Of a DNA stretch of 34,251 nucleotides, positions 10,957-27,468 are shown in pieces. Under the pieces are notes generated by a model. That model ran no database searches, had not been told where the DNA came from, and saw nothing but the letters and a program-made list of their open reading frames with translations. The position numbers and the translations under genes were made by a program. The DNA is taken from positions 1 through 34,251 of the forward strand of contig NW_021832744.1 in NCBI RefSeq assembly GCF_006345805.1, in the 5' to 3' direction. Position 1 is the first letter of the stretch. Every line of letters begins with the position of its first letter. This DNA is from Octopus sinensis (Eukaryota).

Positions 10957-11161
10957 TTATTTCACTATCATTACACCCTTTTGGGCCCTGTTTGTGAACT
11001 GGTTGTTACGGGTACTCATATAGTTATAAACCCCTGGCTTTACACGGAGTAGGGCACCCGGGTAAGAAGCTGGAGCTTTGTTCAGTAGTTTGTCCATTGC
11101 AGCCTTCCTCTCCTTGCTGTCTTGCACAAGGGTGTTTGGGCACTGCGCCGCCTTCAGGCAC
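10957..11161 (-). CDS. DD3-3: DD3-3-like terminal coding exon 13: CLKAAQC...LNKAPASYPGALL...YMSTRNNQFTNRAQKGVMIVK*
   Basis: Acceptor cctatttcag|, phase-2 start, 205 nt to TAA at 10959-10957. Confidence 0.93.
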
Positions 11162-11394
11162 CTGAAATAGGAAGAGACGAGGGGATTATTGAAACATGCA
11201 AAAAATTGAAGCCCACATGTCTGTGGCATCAAGAAGGTTGCTTCGTGAACCTAAGGTTTCAGGTTTCAGTCCCAATGCATGACACCTTGGGGGGAGGAGA
11301 AACCTTCTGTTGTAGCCCTGGGACAAGCAATATCTTGCAAGTGGATATAGTAAATAGATGAAAACTGTGTGGAAGCTCATCATATATATATCGG

Positions 11395-11730
11395 GACCCC
11401 CTTCGGTTACGACACTGACCATGGTATTGCAACTAGAAAATTACCCTCCCAGGCACAAGTCAGGGCAATGTGGTTTATGGATGACCACCAGTCGCCCATG
11501 CATACCAGCCTCTTCTCTCCACGTCACCAGTGTTATCCAAGGGAAAGACAAACAAAGGCCGATACAGCTTGGCACCAGTGACGTCGCAATTCATTTCTAC
11601 AGCTGAGTGAACTGGAGCAACGCGAAATAAAGTGTCTTGCTCAAGAACACAACACGCAGCCCGGTCTGGGATTCGAGCTCACAACCTCAAGATAGTAAGC
11701 TCGACGCTCTAACCACTGAGCCATGCGCCT

Positions 11731-11735
<5 letters not shown>
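11395..11735 (-). mobile_element. tRNA-derived SINE family C
   Basis: Minus strand ggcgcatggctcagtggttagagcg...tcgaatcccagacc head followed by a non-tRNA body. Confidence 0.75.
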
Positions 11736-11775
<40 letters not shown>

Positions 11776-11899
11776 ATGTGTATATATATATATATACATG
11801 CATATATATATACATGTGTATATATATGCAAACATGTTTATATGTATATATATGCATATATATACATGTATGTATGTATATATATATATATTATATATA

Positions 11900-11943
<44 letters not shown>

Positions 11944-12250
11944 TTATTTATATATTCATATTATACAGATATATATATATACATTTAGATATGTGTATAA
12001 ATGTGTATGTATGAGTATATATGTATGTCTTATATTATAATATATGTGTGTGTGTGTGTTGTATCGACCCCATTGCGTAACTGGTATATTTAATCAACCC
12101 CAGAAGGATGAAAGGCAAAGTCGACCTCGGTGGAATTTGAACTCAGAACATAACGACAGAAAAAATACTGCTTAACATTTCGCCCGGCGTGCTAACGTTC
12201 CTGCCAGCTTGCCCCCACCCCAAGAAAAAAATATATATTAAAAAACTTAC

Positions 12251-12421
12251 GTGTAATATCCGGAGGAAGCCATACTGAGAGCAAGGTCCACTGTTTTATG
12301 TTCAGCTCGTTGTGATAGATCCAAACAATTTCCGAGTTGTTCCACAGAGTTGTGTCCGCAAAGGCTAATGGATAACTAACGCCACCTTTTGCCATCTGCA
12401 ATATGTTGCTGCGGTCAGTTC
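12251..12421 (-). CDS. DD3-3: DD3-3-like coding exon 12: GTDRSNILQ...WIYHNELNIK / VDLALSMASSGYYT (1-nt deletion as assembled)
   Basis: Acceptor tatttgtcag|, donor AC|gtaagt. 171 nt where 172 is needed for phase 1-2. The frame switches near an A run at about 12295. Confidence 0.88.
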
Positions 12422-12424
12422 CTG

Positions 12425-12745
12425 ACAAATATGGGAATAATCATAGAAATAATCATAGAAATAATCTTAGAAATAACCATAGAAATAATCATAGAAATAA
12501 TCATAGAAATAATCATAGGAATAATCATAGAAATAATCATAGAAATAATCATAGAAATAATCATAGAAATAATCATAGAAATAATCATAGAAATAATCTT
12601 AGAAATAATCATAGAAATAATCATAGAAATAATCATAGAAATAATCATAGAAATAATCATAGAAATAACCATAGAAATAATCATAGAAATAATCATAGAA
12701 ATAATCATAGGAATAATCATAGAAATAATCATAGTAATAATCATA
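12425..12745. repeat. 12-bp minisatellite (agaaataatcat)n, about 26 copies
   Basis: Direct reading; few variant units. Confidence 0.95.
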
Positions 12746-12768
12746 GAAAAAACACAAGTTTTCGATGA

Positions 12769-24640: not shown

Positions 24641-24823
24641 CTCCGTTTTGTTCCCGTTGCATGCACTTATCGTACCAGTCCCAATTCTCGTGTAGACCGC
24701 GATCCGTCCTCACGATGCTCTTGTAACTATTGTAGGTTCTCAGGTTTGCTGGATAACCGTTTCTGTAGATGTAGGCTTGCGTATTCGTACTTGTGCCATC
24801 TCTTAGCCGATCACGGGGATTTT
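24641..24823 (-). CDS. DD3-3: DD3-3-like coding exon 4: ENPRDRLRDG...GLHENWDWYDKCMQREQNG
   Basis: Acceptor tatattgcag|, donor GGAG|gtgagt, 183 nt, phase 1-1, open. Confidence 0.92.
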
Positions 24824-25977
24824 CTGCAATATAATCAACAAGAACGGTTACTGTCGAGCGGTTACTGTTTATATCTCGTTCAGAGATTTATTATTGCTTT
24901 CAGACAGTTTTTCTAAATCAGTGACAGTGGTTGCTGTGAAAAACGTTAAATATTATTTGCATGGGTCTCCTTCATCGAAGACCGGTGTTTACCATGCGTT
25001 GACGAGAGGCAATTACCTTGAAACTATAGTCCGTATGTAGTACTTAGGTTTTCGAGGGAGGATGACCTCCCTTTGCAAATAACACAAGGGCACTGAGATT
25101 GTGTCTAAAGTACATCTGGTGACGTTGATCGCCTGGGGCTAAAAGCATCAGTAACACCCTACCCCCAGTGGCTAGCCACATTCAGATGGCGAGTACACCT
25201 TACGTTGTCGAGCGGTTACTGTTTATATCTCGTTCAGAGATTTATTATTGCAATCAATAAGAGATTATCCAATTATTGACTTTTGGAAAACCGATAGATC
25301 GATCTCAAATCATATCTTGTCTCAGTCATTGAACTGCGACAATGCTTTGAAACCGACCTATTTTCCATTACATTTTAGACAGACTCAAGGCTGAGTTGCT
25401 GAAGCAGAAATATCGTTATGGATTTGCTTGTTGTACTATTTCCTATTTCCTATTTCTATCTAGAAATCAAAGGAAATGACTACTATCCCCTTCACATTTT
25501 GCTTTTGTCACCTGGACATCAATGTTTACAAACCGACCTATTTTCCATTACATTTCAGACAGATTCAAGGCTGAGTTTCTGAACCAGAAATATCATTATA
25601 GCAAATATTCTGCTCAATACTACAAATTTGTTTGTCACTTGCTTGACCTTAATCACTTGAGCATGTCCCTTAGTGGCTGACGATATGTGCATCTCTAATC
25701 AAGAGCAGGAGTAGCGGGGGAGCATCATAGCCATGTGTTGAGAGGGATTTGGAGGGGGGGGTGCTTAAATATTTGTAGGAAATATTAGCCATCTTTCATA
25801 GTTTCTAGGGGTGAACAAATAGTAACTGCTACCCAAGGGACAAACAAAAAAATCTGGTTACACAGTGTAATAATTAAAGAAGTGAAACACAACCATTGCA
25901 TGTGTTATTACTAGCATAATGACCCTCCCAAGACAGCAAAAATGAATAGAATAAAAGAAGAAAATAAACCAACTGAC

Positions 25978-26146
25978 CTACGATTAACTTCTGACACATG
26001 TACTGTAATACTATGTTGCATTGTCTCTTGGAAGGGTTGGTGTCATTGGTAATGCCACACCCATGTTGATTGGTCCATTCCAGCTTCAGGATGCTTCGAC
26101 CCTGTTTTGATCCTCCTGCTGATGCGGCACTGCTTTGGAAGTATTT
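25978..26146 (-). CDS. DD3-3: DD3-3-like coding exon 3: KYFQSS...LKLEWTNQHGCG...CNIVLQYMCQKLIV
   Basis: Acceptor atcatttcag|, donor GTAG|gtcagt, 169 nt, phase 0-1, open frame. Confidence 0.9.
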
Positions 26147-26288
26147 CTGAAATGATAACAGAATGAATAATTGGACGAGAGAAAGAGAGAGGGGGAGAAA
26201 GGGAGAGAGGGGGAGGAAGGTAGGGTAGGAGGAAGGAAGGAAGGAGAGAAAGAAAGAAAGAAGAAAGAAAGAAAGAAAGAAAGAAGGA

Positions 26289-26323
<35 letters not shown>

Positions 26324-26410
26324 GAAAGAAATAAAACATTATATTGTATGTTTTTATTTCTGTTCTTTATCTGAGATTCGAACCGCGATCCCTCGACCGC
26401 GAGTCCTTAC

Positions 26411-26488
26411 CATTTGATATTGATCTGACGCCGTCCTCGCTGCTGTAGCTTTTCGATCTCCAACGTTATAACCACCATTGTTGTTATT
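26411..26488 (-). CDS. DD3-3: DD3-3-like coding exon 2: NNNNGGYNVGDRKATAARTASDQYQM
   Basis: Acceptor tttcgtttag|, donor ATG|gtaagg, 78 nt, phase 0-0. Confidence 0.92.
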
Positions 26489-26585
26489 CTAAACGAAAGA
26501 AAAAATATTTCGGTAGTTAGCCATTTGTTTCCTGCCTCAAGGGCAAGCAACTGCATGAAGTTCAAAGAACTGAAGCAGGAGAAAG

Positions 26586-27010
26586 AAATTTTACAAGAAA
26601 TTTGAATGGAAATTTTGCTAGAAATTTTACCAGAAATTTTACCAGAAATTTTGCTAGAAATTTTACCAGAAGTTTTGCTAGAAATTTTGTTAGAAATTTT
26701 GCTAGAAATTTTGTTAGAAATTTTACCAGAAATTTTGCTAGAAATTTTACCAGAAATTCTGCTAGAGATTTTGTTAGAAATTTTGTTAGAAATTTTGCTA
26801 GAAATTTTACCAGAAATTCTGCTAGAAATTTTGTTAGAAATTTTGCTAGAAATGTTGCTAGAAATTTTAGCAGAAATTTTGCAAGAAATTTTGTTAGAAA
26901 TTTTGCTAGAAGTTTTACCAGAAATTTTGCTAGAAATTTTACCAGAAATTCTGCTAGAAATTTTGTTAGAAATTTTACCAGAAATTTTAGTAGAAATTTT
27001 ACAAGAAATG
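26586..27010. repeat. 12-bp minisatellite (agaaatttt-gct/acc/gtt)n, about 35 copies
   Basis: Direct reading; interspersed variant units. Confidence 0.95.
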
Positions 27011-27134
27011 CGACTAAATGTGGTGCTCCAGCATAGCCACAGTCAAATGATTGAAACAAGTAAAAGAGTGAAAATAAAAGGGAAAAAATATATTTTGCGT
27101 AACAGGAGGTGATGTGCGGTGAAATTTAATTTAC

Positions 27135-27287
27135 CTGAGAATCAAAGAGGCGATTGGCGTTCCTACGCCCCGCGGTGTTCTCGTTGAGTCTGTTGTTTGA
27201 GCCTCGGGGGTTGTGCAGGTATATATCAGCTTTCACAATTATGACGATAAAAAATAGTAACAGGCAAGGTATCGCGCACTTTGACAT
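27135..27287 (-). CDS. DD3-3: DD3-3-like coding exon 1: signal peptide MSKCAIPCLLLFFIVIIVKA then DIYLHNPRGSNNRLNENTAGRRNANRLFDSQ
   Basis: ATG at 27287, 11 nt after a polypyrimidine/AG acceptor (exon starts 27298), implying an upstream non-coding exon. 153 nt, phase-0 donor CAG|gtaaat. Confidence 0.92.
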
Positions 27288-27468
27288 CTTGCTGTAATCT
27301 GTAAAAAAAGAAAAAGAAAAAGAAAAGGAACCAGTGGATTAAGGATTAAGGATTAAGTGAAATAATCGCGTGTTTAAAGGATCGGGGGGAACGGGGAGAT
27401 GCGGCGCCACAGAAATAGTAAATGGTTTACGGCACAAACGAAATCACTTGAAACTTGTTTAAATAATA

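What the first reader, a model, noticed from the sequence alone, without database searches (positions are those of the whole stretch)
10957..27298. Complete hidden DD3-3-like gene: a secreted protein of essentially unknown function
Seen: 13 phase-compatible exons scattered through 16 kb of repeats encode about 658 aa. The protein has a 20-aa signal peptide, about 15 Cys in the mature chain, N-glycosylation sequons (NDT, NIT, NET, NNS) and no C-terminal membrane anchor (ends KGVMIVK*). Known (from recall): the family is named after Dictyostelium DD3-3, occurs patchily in protists and marine invertebrates, and has no established biochemical activity. Inference: invariant His/Glu/Asp/Arg-rich motifs ([40 protein letters not shown]) suggest an uncharacterised extracellular enzyme or metal/ligand-binding fold. 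This is the best candidate here for an undescribed system.
Basis: partly seen in the sequence, partly recalled or inferred. Interest (0 to 1): 0.72.

Follow-up and report, generated by a model that had tools for sequence, protein, structure and literature searches.

The report
Octopus DD3-3 gene, frame broken here
This is a real, already annotated octopus gene for a secreted protein of the poorly understood DD3-3 family. Its reading frame is broken in this scaffold by what look like sequencing errors, and relatives in protists fused to NADPH-oxidase-type modules suggest the family does extracellular redox chemistry.

Summary
The 13 exons are real. The window is an unplaced Octopus sinensis scaffold. 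The gene is not hidden: RefSeq already lists it as XP_036355112.1, "protein DD3-3-like".

It is not an open 658-codon frame as it stands. The joined exons total 1975 nt. Ten single-base indels in exons 9, 10 and 12, scored against the intact O. vulgaris ortholog, break the frame. They sit in a 2.5-kb patch with about 50 such indels, introns included, so assembly error is the likelier cause than a pseudogene.

The family has no Pfam model and no sequence relative in the PDB. A confident AlphaFold model matches only cupredoxins, through its C-terminal part. The blue-copper ligands are largely missing, and the N-terminal half has no solved relative.

The new lead is a domain fusion. In 9 of 23 long family members tested, the whole DD3-3 domain precedes a membrane helix and a complete ferric-reductase/NOX module. 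These come from an amoebozoan, dinoflagellates and a diplonemid. This points to an extracellular redox role. The gene is known; the function remains open.

The parts
27135..27287 (-). Exon 1: ATG, 20-residue signal peptide, HNPRGS motif (27198-27215)
   Evidence: Identical over 153 nt to O. vulgaris exon 1; motif located; GT donor.
26411..26488 (-). Exon 2 (NNNNGGYNVGD...QYQM)
   Evidence: tblastn with paralogs; identical to O. vulgaris.
25978..26146 (-). Exon 3, QHGCG motif (26054-26068) with the family-invariant His105
   Evidence: one synonymous difference from O. vulgaris.
24641..24823 (-). Exon 4, GLHE motif (24687-24698)
22951..23137 (-). Exon 5, [15 protein letters not shown] motif (23001-23039), the most conserved acidic/aromatic block of the family
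22376..22539 (-). Exon 6
20547..20697 (-). Exon 7, followed by a GC donor that is conserved in O. vulgaris
19526..19630 (-). Exon 8, NHLGNG motif (19609-19626)
   Evidence: identical to O. vulgaris.
17740..17802 (-). Exon 9 (YNISTDDY... region). The frame is broken by four single-base indels at about 17790, 17785, 17765 and 17741; the net length is unchanged.
   Evidence: Alignment to O. vulgaris exon 9; reading of the three frames.
15823..16114 (-). Exon 10 ([19 protein letters not shown]...NLNVRGKRGNIVQ...VHIQWTG). It has five single-base indels at about 16093, 16081, 16001, 15991 and 15967, and an in-frame GAG insertion at 16107-16109. It holds the invariant His457 and His510 and the start of the cupredoxin-like domain.
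15127..15180 (-). Exon 11, SNTHNN motif (15161-15178). By pattern this sits where the first His ligand of a blue-copper site would be.
   Evidence: weak halocyanin match over this region in relatives.
12251..12421 (-). Exon 12. A single-base deletion at about 12293 shifts the frame before ...DLALSMASSGYYT.
10957..11161 (-). Exon 13 with the TAA stop. It carries the YNYMSTRNNQFTNRAQKG loop, which is the cupredoxin ligand-loop position with Ser where most relatives have Cys. Ends KGVMIVK*.
15500..18000 (.). Patch of the scaffold with about 51 single-base indels against O. vulgaris in about 1800 aligned nt, exons and introns alike. Most other 500-nt bins have 0-2, although smaller clusters occur at about 33.0-34.0, 21.5-22.0, 11.5-12.5, 9.5-10.0, 6.5-8.0 and 0.5-1.5 kb.
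   Evidence: The indels are mostly outside homopolymers and include both insertions and deletions.
1..26 (-). Start codon and first codons of exon 1 of a second, tandem DD3-3 copy; the scaffold ends inside it.
   Evidence: O. vulgaris has the same tandem pair.

Best explanation
What it is (shown). This is the Octopus sinensis ortholog of the first of two tandem octopus DD3-3 paralogs. It is a 13-exon minus-strand gene for a roughly 657-residue secreted, N-glycosylated, disulfide-rich protein, already in RefSeq as XP_036355112.1.

State of the sequence (shown, cause inferred). In this scaffold the frame is interrupted by ten single-base indels in exons 9, 10 and 12. I infer that these are consensus errors of a poorly polished long-read assembly patch, not mutations, so the animal most likely has an intact gene.

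How the protein most likely works (inferred).
- The DD3-3 domain has an N-terminal part of about 370 residues with no solved structural relative, and a C-terminal cupredoxin-like beta-sandwich with a large insertion.
- The classical blue-copper site is not kept. Cys is Ser here, and the second His and the Met are Asn.
- In an amoebozoan, dinoflagellates and a diplonemid, the entire domain is the signal-peptide-led ectodomain of proteins that continue with one membrane helix, a six-helix bis-haem ferric-reductase domain and cytosolic FAD and NADPH domains. This is the same layout as DUOX.
- I therefore propose that DD3-3 is an extracellular redox-linked catalytic or electron-accepting domain. 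Its active centre would be built from the 93 invariant, mostly polar residues, which include His105, His457, His510 and the [12 protein letters not shown] block, and it probably holds a metal.
- In animals the domain is released as a free secreted or cell-surface protein. It would be supplied by a separate reductant and used in innate-immune or cell-contact settings.
For: Identity.
- Hits of E = 0 to 1e-120 name DD3-3 or DD3-3-like proteins across Metazoa.
- The best hit has a contig length of 34251, equal to the window, and the accession XP_036355112.1.
- The conceptual protein is 97.1% identical to O. vulgaris copy 1 and 91.2% to copy 2.
- The window is collinear with O. vulgaris locus L001.

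Assembly error.
- Exons 1-8 (1190 nt) show 6 substitutions and no indel. Exons 9-10 (353 nt) show 9 single-base indels.
- The indel-dense patch at 15.5-18.0 kb includes introns.
- In the two alignments that span the patch, 33 of 56 single-base indels are not in a run of the same base and 45 of 56 lie in runs of at most two. Insertions and deletions are mixed. Clean segments have 1-4 indels per 3 kb, mostly in homopolymers.
- The four indels in exon 9 cancel to zero net length.
- All splice sites and the start and stop codons are intact.
- No invariant family residue is substituted.
- dN/dS against O. vulgaris is 0.32, from 9 synonymous and 11 non-synonymous differences.
- Both O. vulgaris copies read through these exons.

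Fold.
- The AF2 model of the Argonauta relative has pLDDT 88.7 and pTM 0.90.
- All 50 PDB matches listed are cupredoxins or copper nitrite reductases. The best is plastocyanin, with probability 0.98 and target TM-score 0.63.
- There are sub-threshold halocyanin TIGR03102 matches over the YDFVPN...HIQWTGSNTHNN region.
- JGI labels some family fragments 'plastocyanin'.

Fusions.
- Ferric_reduct + FAD_binding_8 + NAD_binding_6 follow the DD3-3 region in 9 of 23 long family representatives.
- Sources are Ceratiomyxa, Cladocopium, Durusdinium, Biecheleria, Artemidia and environmental transcripts. One cluster has 99 members on 4.2-4.6 kb contigs.
- The DD3-3 part aligns end to end at 36% identity, E = 4e-114.
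- A hydrophobic helix follows it.
- The haem-His pairs and the HPFT, GIGVTPF and CGP motifs are visible in the sequences.

Context. The ascidian homolog is a hemocyte surface glycoprotein whose ligation releases phenoloxidase (PMC6916515). A sponge homolog is induced by microbial patterns (PMC6208332).
Against: - No reads or transcripts of O. sinensis were available, so the indels could be real. Two protein searches found no independent octopus fragment of this gene.
- The indels cluster in the 3' half rather than being spread evenly.
- No Foldseek match reaches E <= 1e-3. The hhalign probability against plastocyanin is only 1.4%.
- The copper ligands are not conserved, so a cupredoxin fold alone says nothing about redox activity.
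- Domain fusion shows functional linkage, not mechanism. The ectodomain could bind a substrate or regulate the oxidase instead of carrying electrons.
- Other family members are fused to lectin or WSC modules instead, and 10 of the 23 long members tested show no known partner.
- I could not inspect model coordinates, so I do not know whether the three invariant His are close together.
Confidence: 0.6

Rival explanations
1. The copy is a true pseudogene in O. sinensis. After the tandem duplication one copy became dispensable and accumulated frameshifts.
For: Ten frameshifting indels are present, and the straight translation stops after about residue 480. A second tandem copy exists that could cover the function. 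No transcript-derived protein of this gene appeared in the protein collections.
Against: The coding region shows 10 single-base indels against about 20 substitutions, far more indels than I would expect from neutral decay. The same indel density occurs in the adjoining introns, and the indels are mostly outside homopolymers. There are no in-frame stops in the proper frames, all splice sites are intact, and invariant residues are kept. dN/dS is 0.32.
Confidence: 0.15
2. DD3-3 proteins are non-catalytic cell-surface recognition or adhesion glycoproteins ('self-markers'). Specificity would lie in their glycans, as proposed for HrSMLP1.
For: PMC6916515 reports a 100-kDa hemocyte surface glycoprotein with individual-specific isoelectric variants, and an antibody against it triggers the contact reaction. 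Five N-glycosylation sequons are present here. The Dictyostelium knockout alters aggregation (summarised in PMC6208332).
Against: Recognition molecules are usually polymorphic and evolve fast. This family keeps about 50% identity from octopus to placozoans and sponges. It also keeps 93 invariant columns, mostly polar, out to protist NOX fusions. It occurs in unicellular organisms and is fused to an oxidoreductase module.
Confidence: 0.15
3. It is a classical blue-copper (type 1) electron carrier, in other words a large plastocyanin.
For: Only cupredoxins match the model. JGI names some fragments 'plastocyanin'. Most animal members keep a His (SNTHNN) and a Cys (YMC) at ligand-like positions.
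Against: This gene, its O. vulgaris ortholog and all four NOX-fused ectodomains examined have Ser in place of the Cys. The fused ones also lack the His. The second His and the Met positions are Asn throughout.
Confidence: 0.05
4. It is a carbohydrate-binding or carbohydrate-modifying extracellular protein with no electron-transfer role.
For: Three long relatives carry lectin-type modules: SUEL, C-type lectin and WSC. The invariant residues are rich in Asn, Arg, Gln, Trp and Tyr. According to PMC6916515, DD3-3 was found as a gene misregulated in an O-glycosylation mutant.
Against: NOX/FRE fusions are three times as frequent among the long members tested (9 against 3). This rival does not exclude the main explanation, because oxidative polysaccharide enzymes also carry such binding modules (my own knowledge of CAZy auxiliary-activity enzymes).
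Confidence: 0.15

Closest known systems
Dictyostelium discoideum DD3-3 and the animal 'protein DD3-3-like' family (RefSeq/UniProt naming)
   Same: Full-length similarity with signal peptide, the same motif series and the same Cys pattern. The window gene is a named member, XP_036355112.1.
   Different: Nothing in kind. This copy has Ser for the usual Cys in the YMC loop, and its frame is broken in this scaffold.
HrSMLP1, self-marker-like protein 1 of Halocynthia roretzi (PMC6916515)
   Same: It belongs to the same family according to that paper, and is a glycosylated protein with a signal sequence.
   Different: HrSMLP1 is described as membrane-associated on hemocytes. The octopus protein has no hydrophobic segment besides the signal peptide. 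No allorecognition data exist for molluscs.
Cupredoxins (plastocyanin, halocyanin, auracyanin; domains of copper nitrite reductase)
   Same: The beta-sandwich of the C-terminal part is the only region with PDB structural matches. There is a weak halocyanin profile match.
   Different: A large insertion is present, the type 1 ligand set is incomplete, and no match is significant at E <= 1e-3.
DUOX (dual oxidase): an extracellular domain, an extra helix and a NOX core
   Same: The protist DD3-3 fusions have the same layout: a secreted ectodomain, one helix, a loop, a six-helix haem domain, then FAD and NADPH domains.
   Different: The ectodomain is DD3-3 rather than peroxidase-like, and the octopus gene itself has no NOX part. 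The DUOX comparison rests on my own knowledge of DUOX architecture.
DOMON-cytochrome b561 proteins (CYBDOM)
   Same: These are another case where an extracellular beta-sandwich domain sits on a transmembrane electron-transfer module (my own knowledge).
   Different: The fold, the cofactor (haem in DOMON) and the membrane module are all different. I cite it only as a functional analogy.

Membership tests
DD3-3 family | Significant similarity over the full length to named DD3-3 proteins | tested here: met
   E = 0 to 1e-225 for the top hits with 97-100% query coverage. The profile search finds 3671 representative clusters.
DD3-3 family | N-terminal signal peptide followed by D-[IL]-Y-x-H-x-P-R-G-S-N-N | tested here: met
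   MSKCAIPCLLLFFIVIIVKA|DIYLHNPRGSNN. Alignment; hydrophobicity.
DD3-3 family | Family-invariant residues and conserved Cys pattern retained | tested here: met
   All invariant columns are kept except codons hit by an indel, which I scored as X. The mature chain has 15 Cys.
DD3-3 family | Uninterrupted open reading frame (a functional gene) | tested here: not met
   The joined exons are 1975 nt, with ten single-base indels in exons 9, 10 and 12. This is probably an assembly artefact, but that is unproven.
Cupredoxin fold | Greek-key beta-sandwich superposable on plastocyanin or azurin | tested here: inconclusive
   The best Foldseek probability is 0.98 with target TM-score 0.63, but E = 0.028 and none reaches E <= 1e-3.
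Type 1 (blue) copper protein | His, Cys, His, Met ligand set | tested here: not met
   Ser replaces Cys in this gene and in the NOX-fused relatives. Asn stands at the second His and at the Met positions. The mapping is by pattern and a weak hhalign alignment.
Type 1 (blue) copper protein | Bound copper | not testable with these tools
   This needs purified protein.
NOX/FRE ferric-reductase superfamily | Ferric_reduct haem domain plus FAD and NADPH domains in the same protein | tested here: not met
   The octopus protein ends at KGVMIVK* with no further domain. Only protist relatives carry the module.

The most novel reading that the evidence does not exclude
The DD3-3 domain is a previously unrecognised class of extracellular redox domain. 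It would have a new N-terminal fold packed against a cupredoxin-like sandwich that has lost the blue-copper site, and a new (probably metal) centre built around three invariant His. It would act as the outward-facing catalytic partner of NOX/FRE electron transport, fused in protists and free in invertebrates. There it could contribute to hemocyte contact reactions and to responses against microbes.
Probability: 0.35. Interest if true: 0.75.

Novelty: already known. Interest (0 to 1): 0.4.

Why it matters
For this locus the practical result is a correction. The RefSeq protein XP_036355112.1 contains out-of-frame stretches and a false C-terminus. The two O. vulgaris models are mis-spliced at the 3' end. 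Anyone using these sequences for phylogeny, proteomics or structure prediction would be misled.

DD3-3 has thousands of members and about 50% identity from sponges to cephalopods. It is absent from vertebrates according to PMC6916515, and it has no Pfam model and no solved relative. The recurrent fusion to complete NADPH-oxidase-type modules in three eukaryotic supergroups turns 'function unknown' into a testable proposal of extracellular redox chemistry. That proposal would also give a mechanistic handle on the ascidian hemocyte contact reaction.

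Tried and rejected
- Pfam and PDB sequence searches of the joined peptide and of a 43-member profile found nothing.
- NCBIfam gave only sub-threshold halocyanin matches.
- A separate model of the N-terminal 312 residues found no PDB relative.
- The viral structure library gave nothing.
- A second protein search with the exon 9-12 peptide of O. vulgaris, meant to find independent octopus transcripts or read contigs, returned nothing above 64% identity. 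The assembly-error question therefore stays open.
- Gene neighbourhoods of two metagenomic homologs were eukaryotic and uninformative.
- Rfam and tRNA scans of the window were empty.
I treat it as a lead only.
- I considered that the window might be a mosaic of the two tandem copies. I rejected this because every segment tested matches copy 1 better than copy 2.
- I did not repair the sequence. The conceptual translation carries X at every codon touched by an indel.

Full report
**Where the window comes from and what is there**

The best hit, P0001, is "protein DD3-3-like [Octopus sinensis]". It is 591 aa long and sits on a contig of 34251 bp, which is the exact length of the window. Its accession is XP_036355112.1. 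The window is therefore an unplaced O. sinensis scaffold, and the gene is already annotated.

The same 90% cluster holds two O. vulgaris proteins, CAI9742991.1 and CAI9742992.1, which are neighbours on one chromosome. I fetched that locus as L001. The window is collinear with it at 95-98% identity. Every segment I tested matches the first O. vulgaris copy better than the second. The conceptual protein is 97.1% identical to copy 1 and 91.2% to copy 2.

**Gene model**

I derived the O. vulgaris exons by requiring an exact translation of CAI9742991.1 and transferred them to the window. This gives 13 exons on the minus strand, listed under parts. There are twelve AG acceptors and eleven GT donors. 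Intron 7 has a GC donor, which O. vulgaris shares.

- a 20-residue signal peptide;
- 15 Cys in the mature chain;
- sequons NDT, NIT, NET and NNS, plus NCS;
- no second hydrophobic segment;
- a C-terminus of KGVMIVK*.

**The frame is broken**

The joined exons measure 1975 nt. Their straight translation runs into a stop after about 480 residues. The O. vulgaris genome reads through the same 13 exons as 657 codons.

The published O. vulgaris model leaves the true last exon early and adds two spurious exons. The final one lies in the first exon of the next copy.

Aligned exon by exon with O. vulgaris, the window shows:

| Exons | Length | Substitutions | Indels |
|---|---|---|---|
| 1-8 | 1190 nt | 6 | none |
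| 9 | 63 nt | 1 | 4 single-base |
| 10 | 292 nt here, 290 nt in O. vulgaris | 5 | 5 single-base, plus one in-frame GAG insertion |
| 12 | 171 nt here, 172 nt in O. vulgaris | 0 | 1 single-base |

The RefSeq model copes by reading parts of exons 9 and 10 out of frame. It gives "YNIRRRLFHNRDKRLKTTKTLERRNRVPVQNKPGRETCWSRTPVGNQHCPVRQNLPGQSHVFPLDAPSPGLDNE". The orthologous stretch in O. vulgaris reads "[74 protein letters not shown]". The model then stops in exon 12.

The length of 658 aa is reached only by reading across the breaks.

**Error or pseudogene?**

I favour assembly error, at about 0.8, for these reasons.
- Single-base indels against O. vulgaris are patchy along the scaffold. Most 500-nt bins have 0-2, while the bins from 15.5 to 18.0 kb have 11, 6, 9, 12 and 13, introns included.
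- Smaller clusters elsewhere mostly coincide with stretches that look like simple repeats.
- In the two alignments that span the patch, 33 of 56 single-base indels are not in a run of the same base. Both insertions and deletions occur. In clean segments the few indels lie mostly in homopolymers.
- The four indels of exon 9 cancel exactly.
- The coding region has about 20 substitutions against 10 frameshifting indels, a much higher share of indels than I would expect from neutral decay.
- dN/dS is 0.32, from 9 synonymous and 11 non-synonymous differences.
- Splice sites and the start and stop codons are intact. No family-invariant residue is substituted.

From my own knowledge, the O. sinensis assembly is based on PacBio long reads with Hi-C, which would fit this error pattern. 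I could not confirm that from the paper library.

I found no independent O. sinensis sequence of these exons, so a real pseudogene remains possible, at about 0.15.

**What the protein is**

The family is very large. There are 2740 clusters at 90% identity and 3671 representatives at 50% identity.

It is also unusually conserved. Octopus proteins share about 50% identity with those of sponges, placozoans and cnidarians, and dozens of columns are invariant.

No Pfam model matches any of 43 members consistently. No PDB chain matches a family profile.

An AlphaFold2 model of the Argonauta relative is confident, with pLDDT 88.7 and pTM 0.90. That relative is 65% identical to the window protein.

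Foldseek against the PDB returns only cupredoxins among the 50 matches listed: plastocyanins, auracyanin, AcoP and copper nitrite reductases. The best has probability 0.98 and a target-normalised TM-score of 0.63. The alignments span about 190 columns for a 97-residue target, so there is a large insertion. None reaches E <= 1e-3.

Two further observations agree with a cupredoxin-like C-terminal domain:
- sub-threshold halocyanin (TIGR03102) matches cover the YDFVPN...HIQWTGSNTHNN region;
- JGI names several C-terminal fragments "plastocyanin".

A separate model of the N-terminal 312 residues finds nothing in the PDB. That model is weaker, with pLDDT 77.

**The copper site is not conserved**

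I compared patterns with plastocyanin, whose sequence I recalled from memory. A weak hhalign alignment places the YxC loop on Cys84 and an Asn on His87.
- The first His ligand would be the His of SNTHNN.
- The Cys would be the one in YMC.
- The second His and the Met positions are Asn in all members.
- In this gene and its O. vulgaris ortholog the Cys is Ser.
- All four NOX-fused relatives examined have Ser and also lack the first His.

The fold may be cupredoxin-like, but the protein is not a blue-copper protein.

**The functional lead**

Among the 150 best family representatives, I scanned the 23 longest, from 832 to 1458 aa, against Pfam.

| Partner found after or beside the DD3-3 region | Number of proteins |
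|---|---|
| Ferric_reduct with FAD_binding_8 (NAD_binding_6 too in all but the truncated P0195) | 9 |
| Lectin-type module (SUEL, C-type lectin, WSC) | 3 |
| N-terminal QSOX module | 1 |
| No known partner | 10 |

The QSOX case comes from a genome annotation of an acanthocephalan and may be a merged gene model.

The NOX/FRE fusions come from these sources:
- Ceratiomyxa fruticulosa (Amoebozoa);
- the dinoflagellates Cladocopium, Durusdinium and Biecheleria;
- the diplonemid Artemidia motanka;
- several environmental transcript-sized contigs.

One cluster has 99 members on 4.2-4.6 kb contigs. JGI calls one protein "predicted ferric reductase/plastocyanin".

The DD3-3 part aligns end to end with the cephalopod protein at 36% identity, E = 4e-114. 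It starts with a signal peptide and is followed by one strongly hydrophobic helix before the ferric-reductase membrane region.

The oxidase part shows the paired His of the two haem sites and the HPFT, GIGVTPF and CGP motifs (read from the sequences).

This is the DUOX layout with a different ectodomain. The DUOX comparison rests on my own knowledge.

Across the octopus protein, 15 animals and four fusion ectodomains, 93 columns are invariant. They are dominated by Asn, Arg, Asp, Gln, Tyr and Trp, and include exactly three His: 105, 457 and 510 in window-protein numbering.

**Mechanism I commit to**

I propose that the DD3-3 domain works on the outer face of the membrane as a redox-linked catalytic or electron-accepting domain, probably with a metal centre other than type 1 copper. 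Animals would make it as a free secreted or surface-bound protein.

What is shown: family membership, secretion signals, the confident model, the fact that only cupredoxins match, the missing ligands and the fusions.

What is inferred: electron transfer to the domain, the metal, and any substrate.

I put this at about 0.4. The alternatives are a recognition glycoprotein (PMC6916515), a glycan-binding role, or regulation of the oxidase rather than catalysis.

The published biology fits an immune or redox setting but does not prove it. Antibody ligation of the ascidian homolog releases phenoloxidase from hemocytes (PMC6916515). A sponge homolog rises 3 h after exposure to microbial patterns, and the Dictyostelium knockout aggregates faster with disturbed cAMP signalling (PMC6208332).

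**Novelty and verdict**

The gene and its family are known, and this locus is ordinary apart from the sequence and annotation errors. None of the 12 papers in the library that mention DD3-3, and none of the papers found with ferric-reductase, cupredoxin and NADPH-oxidase terms, appears from its title or abstract to describe a link between DD3-3 and NOX-type modules. That link may be new, but it concerns the family rather than this window.

Interest is 0.4.

Noticed in passing
window 1-26 (minus strand): The scaffold ends 26 nt into exon 1 (ATGTCAAAGTGCGCGATAC-TTGCCTG) of a second, tandem DD3-3 copy, preceded by the same upstream sequence as copy 1. This mirrors the tandem pair in O. vulgaris. 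The assembly probably broke at the duplication.
   Followed up: partly
L001 26572-26776, 33891-33927 and 42438-42497 (O. vulgaris OX597841.1): The O. vulgaris model CAI9742991.1 leaves the true last exon early, although the genome reads on in frame to ...KGVMIVK*. It adds two spurious exons, the last of which lies inside exon 1 of the next copy. CAI9742992.1 starts at exon 3 and also has a false C-terminus.
   Followed up: partly
window 2770-5424 (+): A non-LTR retrotransposon remnant lies downstream of the gene. It has an endonuclease-like ORF (weak Exo_endo_phos match), a reverse transcriptase ORF (RVT_1, E = 5e-31) and a further ORF, split by frame breaks.
   Followed up: partly
window 13178-13819 (+), inside intron 11: Two ORF fragments lie here. 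The second gives a weak DDE_3 match (E = 0.0016, below threshold); from its sequence I read it as a DDE (Tc1/mariner-like) transposase remnant.
   Followed up: partly
window about 7100-7310, 15285-15436, 18680-19140, 23190-23650, 28530-28940 and 31330-31790: Copies of one short interspersed repeat recur in introns and flanks, and at many places in the O. vulgaris locus. I did not classify it. Rfam and ARAGORN report no tRNA-like match.
   Followed up: no
window 23711-24640 and 26584-27059: There is a purine-skewed, GC-rich low-complexity block in intron 4 (GC skew 0.59). From the repetitive ORF translations, intron 1 appears to hold a long short-period tandem repeat. Long (ATT)n/(AAT)n-like tracts flank exons 9-11 and may explain why polishing failed there.
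   Followed up: no
P0279 (Pomphorhynchus laevis KAI0983768.1): One family member carries an N-terminal quiescin-sulfhydryl-oxidase module (Thioredoxin, FAD_SOX, Erv1/Alr) in front of a partial DD3-3 region. This could be a second redox fusion or a merged gene model.
   Followed up: no
P0250, P0282/P0432 and P0156 (choanoflagellates Microstomoeca, Diaphanoeca and UC4): Choanoflagellate DD3-3 proteins are 1016-1431 aa long, with several matched stretches and no Pfam partner. They may be tandem DD3-3 domains or carry unknown extra domains.
   Followed up: no
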